From contig NC_043003.1 in assembly GCF_006345805.1 (NCBI RefSeq), forward strand, positions 103,974,001 through 104,038,000: a DNA stretch of 64,000 nucleotides, given 5' to 3'. Each line of letters starts with the position of its first letter. Position 1 is the stretch's first letter. The notes beneath the pieces were generated by a model. The model did not search any database. It was given only the letters and a program-made list of their open reading frames with translations, and was not told the origin of the DNA. Source of the DNA: Octopus sinensis (lineage: Eukaryota). The translations under genes were made by a program, and so were the position numbers. Shown here piece by piece: positions 1 to 41,200 of this stretch.

Positions 1-1232
1 TGTTGTGGCTAACTTATCAAATTTCTTGAAGACACCACCTGAGTCACTGATGGCAGCTCATAAGTGGATGTTATCTAACTTGAATTTGCTAAAGTCTTCA
101 ATTCAGTACCATACTTATGGTAAAATTCTCTGCAACGGGTGTGAAAGATGATCTTTATAACTGGTTGAAGTCCTTCATTCTTGGTCAAGAAGAGGTAGTC
201 ATAGTTTTATGACAACATTCTTCACCCTATGAGATGGCATCTGGTGTACCATAGATATTCGTTCTTAGACCCTTGTTGCTTGTTACATATATTAATGACA
301 CAGATGCCAGCTTGAAGAATGTTACAGAGCTGAAATATGTAAATGACACCAAGCTGTAACTTGAGATAAAAAGAACAGATCCTATCTACTATAGATCTTT
401 CCTACAATTGGATCTGGATACAGTGCAGCAATAGATTAGTGACTGGCAACTCAAGTTAGCTGTGGGACAAGTGTACCACCCTGCATTTTGGGAGGAAAAT
501 CCCAGCTTTTACATACTCCCTGTACAACACCAATCTTAAGAAATCTGCTACTGAATGTTATCTGGGCATTATTGTTAACGACAATTTGTGTTGGACAAAC
601 TGCATCTCTAAAATTGTCAAGAAGGCCAAGGGTGTTTTAGCATCTCTCAGTAAGACTTTTGTCAGCTATTCTTATGGCTATGGTATGTCCATACTTAGAG
701 TTTGCATCACCAGTCTGGAACCCCTGTCTTGCTTAGTATATCAATCTCCTGAAAACCATTCAGAAACTTGCAACCAGATGAACACCTATCATCAGACACC
801 TACCATGTCTTGGTTCCCTTGGCATGGACACACCAAAGCTCCAACATGTGGTAACTGATGTGGTAGACACCCACAAGCTTATCTACTATCTTTCCAACAA
901 CAACCTTTGGACACCTTTTTGAATTCCATTTATCTTAACACTCATGGACATGCTTACAAAATCCAAAAGCAACACAGACCCATAACTTTCAGAAACATCA
1001 GGATTGCTGAAGCATGGAATAAACTACCTGCATCAGTAGTTGGCTGTCAGGACACTGCGTCCTTCAAAACTTCACCAATAGTATGCCTGATGCCCCCCAC
1101 TTTTTTTTTAATTAACAGCTTGTTTACTTTTTACTTCCTGTGCACTATTCTATGTACTGCTCATATACTTTTGACTACTTTTTCTGATGAGTTGTAGTGC
1201 ACCTGAGCACTGTATACAATAACTTCATTCAT
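1..1232 (+). mobile_element. Degraded CR1-group LINE: reverse transcriptase fragment plus 3' tail
   Basis: Manual translation across stops and frameshifts gives CR1 RT motifs: VDVI*LEFAKVFNSVP, SGVP*IFVLRPLLLVTYIND, YVNDTKL, AEAWNKLPASVV. It ends in gatgagttgtagtgcacctgagcactgtatacaata, a tail shared with the copy near 10150-10210. Confidence 0.85.
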
Positions 1233-6884: not shown

Positions 6885-7570
6885 CAAGGTAGTATCAAAA
6901 AGTTCCTGGACTAGTTATGTTTGATAAAAAATAACTTATTTACCTAAGTTTTAATATCATCTCCCTCGAAATACTCACCTTGCACAGCAATACACTGGTC
7001 TTAGAGTTCCTGCCACTTTTGGAATCTGGCATGGAAGTTGTTTTCCATAAGCGAGTCTCGGACTTTTTGCAATTTGCTCTGGATCTCAATAATGGTGTTA
7101 AAACAGCGACCTTTGAGCCGCATTATCATCTTGGGGAAGAGATGGAAGCCTCTAGATACAAAATCTGGTGAATAAGATAGGTGCAGAAGCAATACCACGT
7201 TGTTTTTGGTGAGAAGCTCACAAGCAAGGATAGTTTGTCGATAGGGTACATTGTCATCATGAAGAATCCACAGATCCAGTCTCTTTCACCAAATGTCCTA
7301 CCTCAAGCACTTCAAAATGTCACAGTAGAACTCGGAATTGACAATCTGGCCCTGGGGGATGAATTCTTGATGCACAATACCACATTTCCGGGGGTGACAC
7401 TTGTAGCAGGTCTTCCAGATTGCTCATCATCTTCCAAGGATGTTCTTCCACTTTTGAAGCATCGGAGCCACTCAAAACATTGCATATGGCCCATTGCCTC
7501 ATCACTGTAAGATTGCCAAAGCATGCACAATGTCTCTGTAGCAGTCCAGGAACTTTTTGATGCCACCTTG
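6885..7570 (-). mobile_element. Internally deleted mariner element with intact TIRs
   Basis: 28-bp TIRs caaggtagtatcaaaaagttcctggact / agtccaggaactttttgatgccaccttg (2 mismatches), flanked by TA at 6883-84 and 7571-72. Minus-strand transposase remnants include FEWLRCFKSGRTSLEDDEQSGRP and YSPDF...FHLFPKM...LKGRCF; the central part is missing. Confidence 0.92.
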
Positions 7571-7610
7571 TACTAGCCAAATACTGAAGTCAATGGTATT
7601 TTAGGGAGTT

Positions 7611-11300: not shown

Positions 11301-11334
11301 GGAAAGTGTAATGATGGTGGCTTCTGATAGGAAT

Positions 11335-11529
11335 TTGAGAAAGAGGGAAAAACCTACTCGTTGAAACAAAACTCCAGAAGAAAACAAAAATTTTCAGACA
11401 GTGACCGTTGGTCACTTACACAAATTGTTAGAAAGGATCACAAAAGTACAGCTCCCAAAATTACTGCAGAGCTTAATGACCACCCTGAGAACCCAGTTTC
11501 CACAAAAACTGTTCGCTGGGAGCTACAAC
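11335..11529 (+). mobile_element. Tc1 transposase N-terminal fragment
   Basis: Open frame FEKEGKTYSLKQNSRRKQKFSDSDRWSLTQIVRKDHKSTAPKITAELNDHPENPVSTKTVRWELQ, typical of the Tc1 HTH region. Confidence 0.8.
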
Positions 11530-11736
11530 AGCTACAATAACAACAACAGCAATGAAAGTAGCAGCAATTTGGTTTCTCAGGATTAGAGTGGGTGGTATGG
11601 ATGGATGGATGGATGGATATGCTGAGGTTAAACTCAATTCCCTAAAATCTAAAACTGTCTTTCCTGCGCAAAAAAATAAACTTGATTAAAAATGATCATT
11701 AACTGTTTTTCTGTTTTTGCTTCAGAGAATAATTAG

Positions 11737-20984: not shown

Positions 20985-21298
20985 TATATAATGGTATACA
21001 GAATTCAGTAGTAAAACCAAGGGATACTTTAGTTAGACCATACTTGTGAAAGGTAAGAGAGTCCAGTTTGCTGGACATTGTTGTAGAGCTGAAAAAGAGG
21101 TAATTTCTACTCTTCTCCTCTGGAAGCCATCTACTCGCAATACCAGAGGGCGCACACTCTCCTACCCTGATGTAATCTCCAGGGATACAGGCATCCAGCA
21201 ACAGGACCTCCGTAATGCCATGATGGACCGTGAAGTCTGGTATAGCATGGTAAATTCCATTGTCTCGACCACGGTCGAACAATGATGATGATGAAACA
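20985..21298 (+). mobile_element. RTE-clade LINE 3' end (second copy at 40200-40352)
   Basis: ORF RVQFAGHCCRAEKEVISTLLLWKP...DREVW followed by a (GAT)n tail; near-identical shorter copy at 40200. Confidence 0.85.
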
Positions 21299-23655: not shown

Positions 23656-23794
23656 ATGTCTCCCTCAGCTCTCCAGCCTCTGCAGAGCATCAAGGATGTA
23701 AGAGATTTAGAGAAAGAGTTAAGCAGCTTAACTCTTTCTCTAAAGCTCTTACATCCTTGATGCTCTGCAGAGGCTGGAGAGCTGAGGGAGACAT
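23656..23794. repeat. 139-bp near-perfect palindrome (69-bp arms, 1-nt loop, 1 mismatch)
   Basis: atgtctccctcagctc...gagttaagc-a-gcttaactc...gagctgagggagacat, read directly from the sequence. Confidence 0.97.
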
Positions 23795-33402: not shown

Positions 33403-33669
33403 ATTTCTTTATTAGATTTCGTTTTTGGATTTGGTTTGCAAGATTCTTTATATGAGTTTGTGTGTTGAAGCATATTCTGTTGTGTCTGGGGAGAGTCATT
33501 TTCTTTTTGTGCCTTATTATTTAACTATTGAAAAGGTTGTAAGACGCAAGGAAAATTTTAGGACAATAAAAATAAGAAAAAAGTGTAAATTTTACCGGTG
33601 AGTGTTAAATAATAAGGCACAAAAATAACATGACTCTCCCCAGGCACAACAGAATTTCTTTATTAGATT
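33403..33669. mobile_element. Retro-insertion with an internal inversion and 16-bp flanking direct repeats
   Basis: atttctttattagatt at 33403-33418 and 33654-33669; 52-bp inverted arms at 33474-33525 and 33604-33655 (3 mismatches). Confidence 0.7.
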
Positions 33670-35830: not shown

Positions 35831-36511
35831 AGGTTGTTCAACAAGAAGAATTTATAGGAAAAAGAGGGTCTATCTTATGTTGACCCTAGACAAGGACTAG
35901 CAATTCGCAATGACCAGTATGGTAGATAGAATGACTAAGTGCAGTCCCTTAGACCCTTAACATTTCTAACAAAGTAGGGTCCTTACTAGTCACTTGAATA
36001 GTTAGTTACATTATACAGGAAGGAAAGGGTCAAACCCAGTGATTAGTAAACTCTTATAAGGCCAAATGAAATACATTGGGGGGGGGGGAGAGAGAGAGAG
36101 AGAATTACTGAATCACCAAATTGTTGGATCAAGTTTTGAAGGTTATGGAAAGAATCATATCACAATTGATTAGGAACTGAAATGGATGTAAATGTTCTGA
36201 AAGTAGAATAGCCAGATCAAGAAGAAGTTGAAGATAAGGGAGCTATTATCTCTTCTGGCAACAAAGGTTTTCTCCCTCCATATGAAGAACAGACCTTGTG
36301 TTTGAGCTGTGATGCTGCATGGTAGGGAGACATGGTCCATGATTGTAAAGGACCTGCAAAGACTACAGGAGATGAAACCAGGATTCTCTCAGCCACTTCT
36401 TACTGTCATTCATCCCTTACGCTAACCATTGTCTATCATTACTCATTACTCTCCCTTGCTCTCTTTATCCCAATCATTCTATCATCTCTAGTTACCATTT
36501 CTTGTTCCCTT

Positions 36512-38218
36512 CAAGGAATGAGGGAACTCTTCTTAACCTTTCTAGAAGCATGCTTCTAAAAAGAGGAACTACCGGTGGTATAATTGGGCAGGTGGTATGA
36601 ACCCAATAGCCAAACTGGGAGAAAAACAATTCTCTCCTTGACAACTTGTGAAGAGGCAAACACTAAGGGAGTCTATCCTGATAGTAAACTGGGTTAGAAG
36701 AGAACTAGGGAACCATTAATTCTAATCATCCCTTGGAAAGTCTGAAGACACAATGAATAAGCTGTAGTTGGGAACAGTGGGGGGAGGAGGGAACTGACTT
36801 TCAATCATGAAGATTGAACTATTCATTCACTCATAGGCACACACAAACACATTCACATCTACATCATTGCCATTATATGTTCTTACGTCTGCTTTTTTAC
36901 ACATTGGCATGAATTGGATAAGAGTTGAGGCACTATACTGTGGATGGATACATTTCCTGTCACTATCCCTTAGTTGCTGTCCCAAAACTTCAAAGTCACT
37001 ATCAACTTTTCCCTGTGAAAACAAAATAATTATGACACTCAACAGAAAGTTGAGTGATCTTTCTATTTAATGTTTGACTGAACTTTCATATATTGAGAAT
37101 ATATGAACAACAGAAATGGAGGTATCCCTCTTCAGCCATGTGAAGCCAGATTCATCATGATTTCAGCGCTCAAAACATGGCATCATTCATCTAGCTAGTG
37201 CTACTGGTTACAGATATCACTAGGGTGGAAGATGAAACATTTTATGATGTCATGCAACTTAACACATGAAGGATAGTTATTACAACTAGAACAAAACTAA
37301 AGGACAGTCAGAATCTTACTACATACATAAAACCTGAACGATGATCATTATTCACAATCAAGTATAATATGGTATTAACATGTGCCATACTTTTATGAAT
37401 GGTTTTTGGTACTCATGTAATCACAAGTAGACTGTTAAACTTATTGGTCCCGTTAAACTTCTCTCCGTGAAACATGCAGACTGTGACAGCTAAAGGTAAT
37501 GCAGACTGCACCAGCACTGGGTTTGTACTACATTGACACTCCAGAAGAATTGAAGATGGGGTTGATCTCTGTGTCACCAACACTAGACAAGTTACTGTGT
37601 TTTCAATGAGACACAATGTAAAGGCAATCTCAGCCCTTCACTTTCCTTGCTCACTTGCCAACTACAGAATATACAGGGTATATTCAGTGCACTGACAGAA
37701 GAGGGGTTGCCTTGCAAGCTGTAAGAGTGAAAAGTACTCACGATGTACATTCATTCAAGGTAACATGACCAAGGAGAGGAAGAGGAAGGAGACAGCTGTA
37801 ACAGAAGGAGAGCAAGAATGCCAATGCGTAAAAAAGCAGACGTAAGAACATATAATGGCAATGATGTAGATGTGAATGTGTTTGTGTGTGCCTATGAGTG
37901 AATGAATAGTTCAATCTTCATGATTGAAAGTCAGTTCCCTCCCCCACCCACTGTTCCCAACCACAGCTTATTCATTGTGTCTTCAGACTTTCCAAGGGAT
38001 GATTAGAATTAATGGTTCCCGAGTCCTCTTCTAACCCAGTTTACTATCAGGATAGACTCCCTTAGTGTTTGCCTCTTCACAAGTTGTCATAAGGAGAGAA
38101 TTGTTTTTCTCCCAGTTTGGCTATTGGGTTCATACCACCTGCCCAATTATACCACTGGTAGTTCCTCTTTTTAGAAGCATGCTTCTAGAAAGGTTAAGAA
38201 GAGTTCCTTCATTCCTTG
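36512..38218. repeat. Long inverted duplication: arms 36512-36910 and 37818-38218, 907-bp spacer
   Basis: Manual alignment shows ~8 substitutions and one 2-bp indel over ~400 bp. Confidence 0.97.
36887..37012 (-). CDS. Candidate exon, GKVDSDFEVLGQQLRDSDRKCIHPQYSASTLIQFMPMCKKAD
   Basis: Acceptor ttattttgttttcacag and donor GAC|gtaaga; 126 nt, phase 0-0, only one frame open; no homology recognised. Confidence 0.45.
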
Positions 38219-41200
38219 TGATCTTGCCACACATCAGACACCAACAAAATTTCTGAACCCAAGCCTTCCTATAGCTAGTTAGTCACTCACTGTTTGCTTC
38301 ATCCACCTTTTTAACAGCAATTATTTTTGTTCACAAGCATATATCTATGCCTGTGTGTATATGTATACATGTATATTTGCTCCTCTGTATATAACTGGTT
38401 CTATAAAGTCTTTCCTGTATATCATGCATAATAGCAAGGTTTAGTAAATGTGTGATGTGGTACCACTCCACATTATTCAACTATGAATAAATTTATACAG
38501 CTCTTATGTAATTAATAACACATTATAATCTATACATAATGTGCTCCAAAGTGAAATGATATTGAAACAATTGTAACCAGTATTAAACCAATGCTGTATT
38601 GATATCTTCATCCTTGTCTTATATGTACACATAAAAATGAATCATAAAATCTATTCAGATTTCAGTTTGCCAAACAAAATCAAATAACTTTAGTTACCTG
38701 TTAAAAAAAAAATTCTCTCTACAAATTAACAATCAGGTTTGTTTCTTTTACCAATGTAATATCACATGTATTTGATTGAAAGTTGAAAACCTGGTTGGTA
38801 GTATATAGTGTTTGAAGGAGAAAAGAGCAGGCTGGGTGGGATGGTGAAGAGAGAGAGAGAGCAAAGGTTGCAGTTCAACAGAAATGAGTCTAACAAAGAA
38901 AAAAAACATGCAAAAACTGCACTAAATAATAATAAAAAGGAGTAATAATAATAAAGACATAAATTTTGGGGAAGGAACAGTCAATTATATCAACTCTGGT
39001 ACTTCCTTGATACTTATTTTATCAGCTTCAGAAGAATGAAAGGAAAAATCAATCCTGGCAAAAATTCAGCTCAAAATGTAAAGTGACCCAATATTTTGAC
39101 TGCCACTCTACTGAATTATTCATTCTAGTTTTGGCACAAAACCAGCTATTTTGAGAAGGAGAGGTAAGTAAATTGTGACTCCAGTACTTGGCTGGTACTT
39201 TATCGACCTTGAAAGATTGAAAGTAAAGTTGACCTCAGCAAGATGATAATAATAATAATAATAATGGTTCCAAATTTGACACGAGGCTAGCATTTCTGAG
39301 GGGAAGGTTGTTAGTCAATACCATTGCTCCCATACATGACTGGTATTTTATCTAATAATGAATAATGATTTCTTACATAGACATATGATGAACAAATTTT
39401 AAGAGAAGAGGAATGTTTGAATATATTGATTCTAATAACTGACTGGTATTTTATTTTTATCAACCTCAAAAGAATGAAAGGAAAGTTGACTTTGGCAAGA
39501 ATGACTGACATAAAACAAGGTTAGAAATGTTAATAATAATAACAACAATAATAAAAAAGAAAGCATGATGCATCTAGTTGCTGAAGACAGCATGCAACAG
39601 TGAAAAAGATAAAGTGCAATAAGAAAATATTTTTAAAACAACTGTAATGCAAACAGATTTCAAATGAGATGATATTCTTCAATTTTCATGTTCTAACTCT
39701 GGAATAGAATAACAATGATTTGAGACTTGACAAACATCCATGCGTGTGTGTGTGTGTGTCTGCACACACACACACACACACACCTGCACGTATATATTCA
39801 AAGCTGAGGATTCACTCCAGGAAAACATTAATTAGCTTCAAATAACTAAAAGGCTATAAACACAATGGAAACTTTCTCTCCCACTCGTGCACCCCAACAC
39901 ATGAGTTTGATAGAAAGTGTAAGTATTGCTAAAAGCGCAACCGTATTCCAAATTTCATAATAAATATTGATTTTTTGCAAAGTAAGCTGCCCCCTATCAC
40001 ACAGATACACAATATATAGACAGACCAATAGATAGACAGATACAATGACAACGATGATCTTTCATAGTCTGAGAAAGATGGTTCAGCAATTTCTTGCTGA
40101 ACAACCTGTGCAAAGGATTTTATAGTAATCAAATGTTGCAGTAGCTCTCTCCCTTCATCAAATCAACATTGTCTGAACAGGTGCATAGTGTGCTACAGGC
40201 TACCAGAGGGCGCACACTCTCCTACCCTGATGTAATCTCCAGGGACACAGGCATCCAGCAATAGGACCTCCGTAATGCTATGATGAACCATGAAGTCTGG
40301 CGTAACATAGTAAATTCCATCGTCTCAACCACGATCGAACAATGATGATGATGCTACATGTTAGGTGTTGAGATTGCAGAGCAACATGAGCTGAAGTCTT
40401 TTGCTAGAGACCATAAGGCACCACCTGGTCCAGGAATTGAAACCATGATCTCAAGATCACGAGTGCAACACCCTAACTACTAGGCTATGCGCCCCCATAT
40501 TTATATTTTCTAATTAATCAGAGAAGCTGCACATATGACATCACATGGTCATCCCACTTTCAGAATAAGATTAAGATTGACATTTTTTGCATGTTCGTGT
40601 GTATGCATCAATAAATATGTGCTCATGTATAAACCTAAGTTTACATACGCATGCACATCATGAACAATATTTGTGCTTACCAATTAACCACCACTTATGC
40701 AAACACACATAAATGCTTATTATTGCCAACCCCTATACACATGCACATACATCACAACACATCACTGTTAAATTTGAAATATAATTTCAAATTTAAAATA
40801 CCATTATTCACACACACAGAAAAATGCTTTCAGTTCATCCTATGATTTCACTGATTATGTCAAAGGAGGAAGATATGACCTTTAGCAGACCCAGAAATGC
40901 CTCTGTGTGTGTGTGTGTGTGTGTGTGAATTATTTATATACTGAGCATTCTGCAGCAAATATTTAAAACAATAATGCCAGCTGCTGAAGTAGGAGAATAA
41001 GGAAGGCTGGATGAAGAAACAGCAACAAATTACTGAGATTTATTTTCTTCCCATCACAACATCAACAAGACACCCAATTTTCCTGTCAATCTGTCAGAAA
41101 TTCAACACTGTTGATGTGAACTCCTGCTTCTTACTGGCCAAAGGGTTTTAGACAATAAATAGTTTTATTTGAAGTTACAGCATCATTTCATCATTACTCT

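What the first reader, a model, noticed from the sequence alone, without database searches (positions are those of the whole stretch)
36512..38218. ~400-bp inverted duplication that loops out a candidate exon and base-pairs over its 5' splice site
Seen: arms 36512-36910 and 37818-38218 are ~97-98% reverse-complementary (about 8 substitutions plus a 2-bp indel), so this is a diverged copy rather than an identical assembly echo. No TSD is evident and I saw no other copy in the window. The left arm includes the last 24 nt of candidate exon 36887-37012(-), its GAC|gtaaga donor and ~375 nt of downstream intron; the antisense copy lies ~800 nt upstream of the acceptor. Inference: a transcript on either strand folds into a ~400-bp dsRNA. 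On the minus strand the acceptor would be in the loop and the donor in the stem, a locus-specific switch for exon skipping or back-splicing and a strong ADAR substrate. Established: coleoid cephalopods edit RNA extensively through intramolecular dsRNA, and flanking inverted repeats promote skipping and circRNA formation.
Basis: partly seen in the sequence, partly recalled or inferred. Interest (0 to 1): 0.75.

Follow-up and report, generated by a model that had tools for sequence, protein, structure and literature searches.

The report
Young 400-bp inverted duplication, non-coding DNA
The 400-bp inverted duplication is real, but the "exon" it is said to regulate is no better supported than chance, so it is most likely one of the many neutral hairpin-forming repeats in a repeat-rich animal genome.

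Summary
Observation confirmed. Arms 36512-36910 and 37818-38218 (399/401 nt) are 97.5% reverse-complementary: 6 transitions, 2 transversions and one 2-bp indel. A unique 907-nt spacer separates them. The window holds no third copy of arm or spacer. There is no target-site duplication, no junction microhomology and no tandem substructure. Either strand is predicted to fold into a ~400-bp stem. On the minus strand the candidate donor GAC|GUAAGA is fully paired.

The exon is not supported. The 42-codon peptide has no relative among 5.8 billion proteins. The only hit in an exhaustive search of 1.84 billion representatives is a repeat-summing artefact. No Pfam domain occurs in any ORF of at least 50 aa from 31.5 to 47 kb. 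Exons with the same signal quality occur 7 times in the window, against 4.7 (range 1-10) in simulated sequence.

Near-perfect local inverted repeats are common in Octopus bimaculoides (0.44% of sampled sites, PMC5625713). This window holds another, a 139-nt palindrome.

Best reading: a young local inverted duplication in non-coding DNA, with the right arm probably the copy. If transcribed, it would be an ordinary ADAR hyper-editing or Dicer substrate. A low-copy long-TIR transposon is not excluded. Transcription, genome copy number and the source organism could not be tested.

The parts
36512..36910 (.). Left arm of the inverted duplication (399 nt); probably the parental copy
   Evidence: AT skew +0.122 matches the flanks (+0.146, +0.106) and the spacer (+0.095).
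36911..37817 (.). Unique 907-nt spacer (the loop of the predicted hairpin)
   Evidence: only a self-hit in the window; no protein-family or protein match; no Rfam match. About 66% of loop bases pair within the loop in the minimum-free-energy fold.
37818..38218 (.). Right arm (401 nt), reverse complement of the left arm; probably the inserted copy
   Evidence: AT skew -0.105, opposite to the local background (mean +0.056, SD 0.10 for 400-nt tiles); a weak polarity hint only.
36887..37012 (-). Unsupported as an exon.
   Evidence: One search gives the translation. Searches find no true homologue. One search puts its signal quality at chance level. It lies inside a 79-codon stop-to-stop frame, 36830-37066.
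36881..36889 (-). Candidate 5' splice site GAC|GUAAGA, buried in the predicted stem
   Evidence: all nine bases pair with 37839-37847 in the minus-strand fold.
37818..37849 (+). Copy, on the + strand, of the candidate exon's last 24 nt plus the donor motif (atgccaatgCgtaaaaaagcagac|gtaagaac)
   Evidence: It differs from the left-arm version at one CpG site (37827 G against 36901 A).
36538..36563 (.). 26-nt imperfect palindrome near the outer end of each arm, with a perfect 16-nt core tagaagcatgcttcta at 36543-36558. The mirror copy is at 38167-38192.
   Evidence: (26 nt, 92%) and reading. Meaning unknown.

Best explanation
This is a young, local inverted duplication of about 400 bp in non-coding, repeat-rich animal DNA, and it has no dedicated function. 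Inferred: a copy of 36512-36910 was inserted in reverse orientation about 0.9 kb away during break repair or replication template switching. The junctions are blunt and no target-site duplication was made. Since then the two copies have drifted apart by about 2%, partly through CpG decay. Also inferred: the open 126-nt frame with splice-like ends that straddles the inner edge of the left arm is a chance feature. Shown by prediction only: if the locus lies in a transcript, of either strand, the arms form a ~400-bp near-perfect RNA duplex. Inferred from established knowledge: such a duplex is promiscuously hyper-edited by ADAR or diced, like thousands of other local inverted repeats in such genomes.
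For: - The arms are 97.5% identical with a unique 907-nt spacer.
- No further copy of arm, spacer or left flank exists in 64 kb, even at word size 7. Two independent insertions of a dispersed repeat 0.9 kb apart are therefore very unlikely.
- There is no TSD around the 1707-bp unit or around either arm, and no microhomology at any of the four junctions (read).
- The arms have no tandem subrepeats.
- No transposase or other protein signal was found: Pfam on all ORFs of at least 50 aa from 31.5 to 47 kb gave none, and a six-frame query of 36100-38650 against 5.8 billion proteins gave none.
- Divergence looks neutral. Transitions outnumber transversions 6:2, and two of the transitions sit at CpG sites, one decayed in each arm. 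One of these is a non-synonymous CGT to TGT change in the 'exon' copy. CpG o/e is 0.12-0.20.
- The left arm and spacer share the A>T skew of the flanks, while the right arm has the opposite skew.
- The exon is at chance level.
- Base rate: 0.44% of random 50-nt sites in Octopus bimaculoides have a >95% inverted match within 2 kb (PMC5625713). A similar (not identical) criterion gives 1.47% for this window, including a second case at 23656-23794.
- The predicted duplex is very stable.
Against: - Genome-wide copy number could not be measured, so a low-copy long-TIR element remains possible.
- The outer termini CAAGG...CCTTG fit the hAT-type YARNG motif, at roughly 1-in-64 chance before allowing for the several superfamily motifs checked by eye.
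- The candidate exon's peptide is polar and looks more protein-like than the other chance candidates in the window. It is exactly 126 nt (phase 0-0).
- All seven signal-defined candidates lie on the minus strand, which may hint at a minus-strand transcription unit.
- The polarity argument from skew is weak (about 1.6 SD).
- Gene conversion between the arms could make the duplication older than 2% divergence suggests.
Confidence: 0.55

Rival explanations
1. One reading: 36887-37012(-) is a real cassette exon of a minus-strand gene. The inverted duplication acts as a locus-specific switch: the stem hides the 5' splice site and loops out the acceptor, promoting exon skipping or back-splicing and attracting ADAR.
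For: The geometry is exactly as described, and the donor is fully paired in the predicted fold. The exon is 126 nt (phase 0-0) with a reasonable acceptor and a gtaaga donor. Complementary flanking sequences do promote both skipping and circularisation in vivo (PMC8330042). All signal-defined exon candidates lie on the minus strand.
Against: No homologue of the peptide was found in 5.8 billion proteins. The only hit in 1.84 billion representatives is one 9/27 match summed over seven tandem repeats. No Pfam domain or homologue was found for any neighbouring ORF. Candidates of the same quality are as frequent in simulated sequence. Within its 24 nt inside the arm, the 'exon' copy carries what is probably the derived, non-synonymous CpG transition. 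A duplication only ~2% diverged is too young to argue for a selected role.
Confidence: 0.07
2. The whole 1707-bp unit (36512-38218) is one non-autonomous class II transposon with ~400-bp terminal inverted repeats (foldback, Tc3/Tc7-like or MULE-like), present at low copy number.
For: Long, near-identical terminal inverted repeats enclose a short non-coding core. The termini CAAGG/CCTTG fit the hAT YARNG motif (sequence; motif from my own knowledge). Each terminus carries a 26-nt palindrome that could be a binding site. The window holds other DNA-transposon remnants: sub-threshold Mos1 and Tc3 HTH matches.
Against: No TSD of any length from 2 to 10 bp is present although the arms are only 2% diverged. 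No other copy or fragment exists in 64 kb. The arms have no subrepeats. No transposase remnant was found. None of the ORFs of the unit appears in any called protein, whereas an abundant LINE tail from the same window finds 13; this test has power only against very abundant families.
Confidence: 0.2
3. The structure is a 907-bp micro-inversion made by staggered breaks. The spacer was flipped and the 400-nt single-stranded overhang was filled in on both sides, leaving inverted duplications at the two ends of the inverted segment.
For: The layout arm / segment / inverted arm is what the staggered-break model produces (PMC1885836). The junctions are blunt and lack TSDs.
Against: The spacer has the same A>T skew as both flanks (+0.095 against +0.146 and +0.106), so it does not look recently inverted; this is weak evidence. 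Known cases involve far larger inverted segments.
Confidence: 0.08
4. The locus is a hairpin-RNA (hpRNA) gene whose ~400-bp stem is diced into endogenous siRNAs that silence a target in trans.
For: The architecture (hundreds of bp of near-perfect stem, ~1-kb loop, recent origin by inverted duplication) is that of Drosophila hpRNA loci (PMC10317233). The predicted duplex is very stable.
Against: The arms match no other sequence in the window. They encode nothing related to any known protein, so no target is visible. There is no evidence of a promoter or of transcription.
Confidence: 0.05
5. Assembly artefact: only one arm exists in the real genome, and the second arm is a misjoined haplotype or a chimeric read.
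For: 2.5% divergence is within the range of allelic divergence in some marine invertebrates (my own knowledge). Inverted chimeras occur in long-read data.
Against: A fold-back chimera gives a palindrome with no spacer, or one that continues into the reverse complement of the flank. Here there is a 907-nt unique spacer, and the right flank is unrelated to the left flank.
Confidence: 0.05

Closest known systems
Local inverted repeats that form long, near-perfect intramolecular dsRNA and are hyper-edited by ADAR (inverted Alu pairs in primates; local inverted repeats in Octopus bimaculoides, PMC5625713)
   Same: A reverse-oriented copy more than 95% identical lies within 2 kb. The predicted duplex of ~400 bp has only 8 mismatches or wobbles and a 2-nt bulge. 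This is exactly the substrate class described.
   Different: The arms are not copies of a dispersed repeat family, the usual source. They form a single-locus duplication, as far as a 64-kb sample can show. Transcription and editing are untested.
Reverse-complementary matches in introns flanking circularised or skipped exons (PMC8330042; Alu-pair-driven circRNAs)
   Same: Complementary sequences lie on both sides of a candidate exon that is a multiple of 3 in length.
   Different: The downstream arm is not purely intronic. It covers the last 24 nt of the candidate exon and its donor, which would block the donor rather than merely bring the splice sites together. The exon itself is unsupported.
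Drosophila hpRNA loci (endo-siRNA hairpins born by inverted duplication; PMC10317233)
   Same: Long near-perfect stem, ~1-kb loop, evolutionarily young, made by inverted duplication.
   Different: hpRNA arms derive from exons of a target gene. Here no target or coding homology is detectable.
Long-TIR or foldback DNA transposons (FB, Tc3/Tc7, MULEs)
   Same: Terminal inverted repeats of ~400 bp around a short non-coding core.
   Different: No TSD, no subrepeats, no transposase remnant and no second copy in the window.
Inverted duplications at inversion breakpoints (staggered-break model, PMC1885836)
   Same: Inverted duplicate copies abut both ends of a segment, with blunt junctions and no TSD.
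   Different: The segment is only 907 bp, and its strand composition does not look inverted.

Membership tests
Local inverted-repeat dsRNA / ADAR hyper-editing substrate | Reverse-oriented match >95% identical over at least 40 nt within +/-2 kb (criterion of PMC5625713) | tested here: met
   399/401 nt at 97.5%, 907 nt apart.
Local inverted-repeat dsRNA / ADAR hyper-editing substrate | Both arms lie on one RNA molecule (the locus is transcribed) | not testable with these tools
   No expression data are available. The fold is only predicted.
Local inverted-repeat dsRNA / ADAR hyper-editing substrate | Clustered A-to-G mismatches in RNA reads from both arms | not testable with these tools
   No reads are available.
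Complementary-intron-driven exon skipping / circRNA | A genuine spliced exon between the complementary sequences | tested here: inconclusive
   Splice-like signals and an open frame exist but at chance frequency. No homologue was found.
Complementary-intron-driven exon skipping / circRNA | Complementary sequences located in the upstream and downstream introns | tested here: inconclusive
   The upstream arm is 805 nt 5' of the acceptor. The downstream arm overlaps the exon's last 24 nt and the donor, so it is not purely intronic.
Complementary-intron-driven exon skipping / circRNA | Back-splice or skipping junction reads | not testable with these tools
   No RNA data are available.
Foldback / long-TIR class II transposon | Terminal inverted repeats | tested here: met
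Foldback / long-TIR class II transposon | Target-site duplication flanking the element | tested here: not met
   The flanks are ...gttccctt | tgatcttg...: 2 of 8 positions match and no direct repeat of 2 bp or more abuts the arms. There is also none around either arm taken alone.
Foldback / long-TIR class II transposon | Multiple copies in the genome | tested here: inconclusive
   None in the 64-kb window, none among called proteins, none in JGI metagenome contigs. The last test is uninformative: an abundant SINE of the window gives only 3 hits there. The genome itself is not available.
Foldback / long-TIR class II transposon | Transposase ORF or remnant; or tandem subrepeats in the arms (FB type) | tested here: not met
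   no protein signal; no tandem repeats in 36512-38218.
hpRNA (endo-siRNA hairpin) locus | Long near-perfect hairpin made by inverted duplication | tested here: met
hpRNA (endo-siRNA hairpin) locus | Arms homologous to a target gene | tested here: inconclusive
   No match in the window or to any protein. The rest of the genome was not searchable.
hpRNA (endo-siRNA hairpin) locus | Dicer-dependent ~21-nt small RNAs from both arms | not testable with these tools
   No small-RNA data are available.
Inversion with staggered-break duplications | Ancestral state with one copy and the inner segment in the opposite orientation | not testable with these tools
   This needs an outgroup. The strand-skew hint points the other way.

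The most novel reading that the evidence does not exclude
The 126-nt frame is a real, lineage-restricted, unannotated exon of a minus-strand gene. The recent inverted duplication has then created a species-specific RNA switch: a 400-bp stem that sequesters the 5' splice site, drives skipping or circularisation, and is tuned by ADAR editing, which would unwind the stem.
Probability: 0.06. Interest if true: 0.5.

Novelty: new member of a known kind. Interest (0 to 1): 0.15.

Why it matters
As it stands, it matters little. It is one more local inverted repeat able to form long dsRNA, a class already shown to be unusually abundant in octopus and to account for most hyper-editing. It would be a clean single-locus test substrate because the arms are unique in this window, so reads should map unambiguously if that holds genome-wide. 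That suits the study of ADAR hyper-editing, dsRNA sensing or dicing in vivo. Only if the exon proved real would it become a natural experiment on how a newborn inverted duplication rewires splicing.

Tried and rejected
1. Homology of the exon peptide. The word-indexed search found nothing. The exhaustive phmmer search gave one hit, P0001, at E = 6.5e-11. I rejected it: it is a tandem-repeat protein in which a single 9/27 match is counted seven times.

2. Pfam on DNA references failed because of stop codons. It was redone with X-joined ORFs of at least 50 aa from 31.5 to 47 kb and found nothing.

3. Six-frame query of 36100-38650 (all open segments of at least 28 aa; a few right-arm segments that duplicate left-arm ones were dropped) against 5.8 billion proteins, hoping to reach an orthologous or paralogous locus. 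There were 7965 word candidates and none was significant.

4. Organism identification through a LINE-tail ORF. The 13 relatives are 57-74% identical. They occur only in ENA metagenome assemblies and one NCBI draft assembly (GCA_054228945.1), with no names. A literature search for those accessions and for a SINE motif found nothing. The organism remains unidentified.

5. Scan of JGI metagenome contigs for a 25-mer of the arm: 0 hits. The positive control, an abundant SINE 25-mer, gave only 3 hits, so the negative result carries no weight.

6. Rfam at gathering threshold (whole window) and at E <= 1 (36000-38800), and tRNA search: nothing relevant.

7. Helitron ends and the terminal motifs and TSDs of hAT, Tc1/mariner, piggyBac and PIF were checked by eye. 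Only the loose YARNG match was seen, without a TSD.

8. A 50-nt tiling replica of the Porath criterion timed out. It was replaced by one self-BLAST.

9. Fetched loci L001-L005 were compared with the repeat region: no match.

Full report
**Observation.** The repeat finder reports arms 36639-36910/37818-38089 and 36512-36639/38091-38218. Each is 98% complementary, and they are split only by a 2-bp indel. BLAST joins them into 399 vs 401 nt at 97.5% identity, E = 0. A global alignment lists 6 transitions, 2 transversions and one TA indel, giving K2P = 0.020. The spacer is 907 nt. The repeat ends sharply at both outer ends, and the sequences beyond are unrelated to each other.

**Copy number and transposon hallmarks.**
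- At word size 7 and E <= 0.01, the arm, the spacer and the 1-kb left flank have no other match in the 64-kb window. The only exception is a 26-nt internal palindrome within each arm.
- The right flank from about 38950 onward, in contrast, belongs to a multi-copy SINE-like family.
- A dispersed family common enough to land twice within 1.7 kb by independent insertion should leave other copies in 64 kb. It does not, so two independent insertions are rejected.
- There is no target-site duplication around the 1707-bp unit. The flanks gttccctt and tgatcttg agree at 2 of 8 positions. Neither arm taken alone has one, and none of the four junctions shows microhomology.
- The arms have no tandem subrepeats.
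- The termini CAAGG...CCTTG loosely fit the hAT YARNG motif. That motif is from my own knowledge. The chance of such a fit is about 1 in 64 before allowing for the several superfamily motifs I checked by eye.

**Coding evidence.** The candidate exon 36887-37012(-) translates to GKVDSDFEVLGQQLRDSDRKCIHPQYSASTLIQFMPMCKKAD.
- No protein among 5.8 billion shares even three 5-residue words with it.
- An exhaustive phmmer search of 1.84 billion representatives returns one protein, P0001. It has seven matched stretches because it is a tandem-repeat protein. BLASTP shows the same 9/27 alignment seven times over. This is score summation, not homology.
- All ORFs of at least 50 aa in six frames from 31.5 to 47 kb give no Pfam match at E <= 0.1.
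- A query joining nearly all open segments of at least 28 aa in all six frames of 36100-38650 finds nothing significant among 5.8 billion proteins.
- I counted segments of 100-300 nt that are open in some frame and bounded by Y-AG, with at least 12 of 17 upstream pyrimidines, and by GTAAG. The window has 7, including this one. Second-order Markov simulations of the window give 4.7 on average (range 1-10).
- The 79-codon stop-to-stop frame around the candidate is also unremarkable: the window holds 232 frames of at least 60 codons.

The exon is therefore not distinguishable from chance. In fairness, its peptide looks more protein-like than the other six candidates. Its length is a multiple of three. 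All seven candidates lie on the minus strand, in keeping with the A>T skew of the + strand.

**Predicted RNA structure.**
- ViennaRNA folds of 36462-38268 give -974.5 kcal/mol (+ strand) and -989.4 (- strand), against about -426 for shuffles.
- The arms alone give -741 and -745 kcal/mol.
- Working through the six transitions by hand, they become 2 G.U plus 4 A.C on the + strand transcript, and 4 G.U plus 2 A.C on the - strand transcript.
- In the minus-strand fold the nine bases GAC|GUAAGA pair with 37839-37847. The last 24 nt of the candidate exon pair with 37818-37841. The acceptor lies in the loop.

**Origin.**
- Divergence looks neutral. Two of the six transitions are at CpG sites, one decayed in each arm. 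These are 36574 CG against CA in the right arm, and 37827 CG against CA at 36901 in the left arm. The second one turns CGT into TGT in the 'exon' copy.
- The window is strongly CpG-depleted: observed/expected is 0.20 for the window and 0.12 for the arm.
- Strand composition gives a weak polarity. The flanks (+0.146, +0.106), the left arm (+0.122) and the spacer (+0.095) share A>T. The right arm has -0.105, about 1.6 SD below the local mean for 400-nt tiles.
- This favours the reading that the left arm and spacer are native and the right arm is an inserted reverse copy. It disfavours a micro-inversion of the spacer by staggered breaks, the model of PMC1885836. The evidence is weak.
- With about 1% change per arm, the event is recent, on the order of millions of years under usual animal mutation rates. 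That is my inference. No rate was measured, and gene conversion could hide a greater age.

**Base rate.**
- Porath et al. (PMC5625713) sampled 10 million 50-nt sites per genome. In Octopus bimaculoides, 0.44% have a >95% identical inverted match of at least 40 nt within 2 kb. This was among the highest values of 19 animals.
- The same paper reports that most hyper-editing lies in such structures, and that even in cephalopods most editing is non-coding.
- By a similar criterion (one self-BLAST, matches whose midpoints lie within 2.5 kb), 1.47% of this window qualifies. That comprises the present repeat plus a 139-nt palindrome at 23656-23794. A third hairpin at 33474-33655 reaches 94%.
- If the window is from an octopus, a structure like this is expected roughly once per few hundred kb, so it cannot be called locus-specific on structure alone.
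- The organism could not be confirmed. A LINE-tail ORF finds only unnamed relatives of 57-74% identity in metagenome assemblies and one draft genome. Those accessions are not in the paper library.

**Mechanism.** I commit to a neutral, recent, local inverted duplication in non-coding DNA (confidence 0.55). Shown by prediction: any transcript through it forms a ~400-bp duplex. Inferred from the literature: that duplex would be hyper-edited, and so partly unwound, by ADAR and/or diced. The rivals are:
- a low-copy long-TIR transposon (0.20), weakened by the missing TSD;
- a micro-inversion (0.08);
- an hpRNA gene (0.05);
- an assembly artefact (0.05), weakened by the unique spacer and the unrelated flanks.

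Origin and function are separate questions, so these figures are not strictly exclusive.

**Comparison with known systems.** The locus works like, and by the one testable criterion belongs to, the class of local inverted-repeat dsRNA substrates. It resembles the complementary-intron arrangement that promotes circularisation and skipping (PMC8330042). However, the defining feature of that system, a genuine exon, is unproven, and the downstream arm covers the donor instead of lying wholly in the intron. It resembles hpRNA loci (PMC10317233) in architecture, but it has no visible target.

**Verdict.** The structure is real and the explanation is ordinary. The interesting part of the interpretation rests on an exon for which there is no evidence beyond chance. 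Interest 0.15.

Noticed in passing
window 23656-23794: A 139-nt near-perfect palindrome: 69-nt arms, 1-nt centre, 98-99% complementary. It starts about 25 nt 3' of a (GA)n run and has no other copy among the >95% local inverted matches. It could be a miniature foldback element or a hairpin-RNA source.
   Followed up: partly
window 33474-33525 / 33604-33655: A hairpin-like inverted repeat: 52-nt arms, 94% complementary, 78-nt loop.
   Followed up: no
window 3139, 4769, 4980, 5512, 7683, 34580 (18-mer start positions); also 9585, 20210, 22944: Two SINE-like dispersed families. One carries GGCAGAATTTGAACTCAGAA (at least 6 copies). The other carries TTTCCATGCTAGCATGGGTTGGACG preceded by (CAT)n (3 copies). 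From memory they resemble abundant octopus SINEs, but this was not tested. The second motif occurs in only 3 JGI metagenome contigs.
   Followed up: partly
whole window: Strong CpG depletion: observed/expected is 0.20 for the window, 0.12 in the arm and 0.15 in the spacer. This is vertebrate-like and low for an invertebrate. It implies heavy historical germline methylation or another CpG-specific mutational process.
   Followed up: no
window 7315-7572(-) and 11331-11537(+); 460-1194(+), 21037-21282(+): Decayed transposon remnants. Two ORFs give sub-threshold Pfam matches to the Mos1-transposase HTH (E = 4e-4) and the Tc3-transposase HTH (E = 6e-4). Two others read by eye as LINE reverse-transcriptase tail fragments. 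The second of these has 57-74% identical relatives only in metagenome assemblies and one draft genome.
   Followed up: partly
window 21453-55033, minus strand: All seven splice-signal-plus-open-frame candidates found by a simple scan lie on the minus strand and none on the plus strand. The + strand has A>T over most of 24-46 kb and 52-64 kb. This may mark a minus-strand transcription unit or may only reflect the skew.
   Followed up: no
P0001 (576 aa, from the representative library): A protein built of about 38-residue tandem units (ADFDRLCVHREVKCGELTDLQPYCKVIRHNITVKRVHI) followed by a Lys/Glu-rich tail. It gave a misleading E = 6.5e-11 to a 42-aa query through repeat summation. This is a caution for short-peptide searches.
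   Followed up: yes
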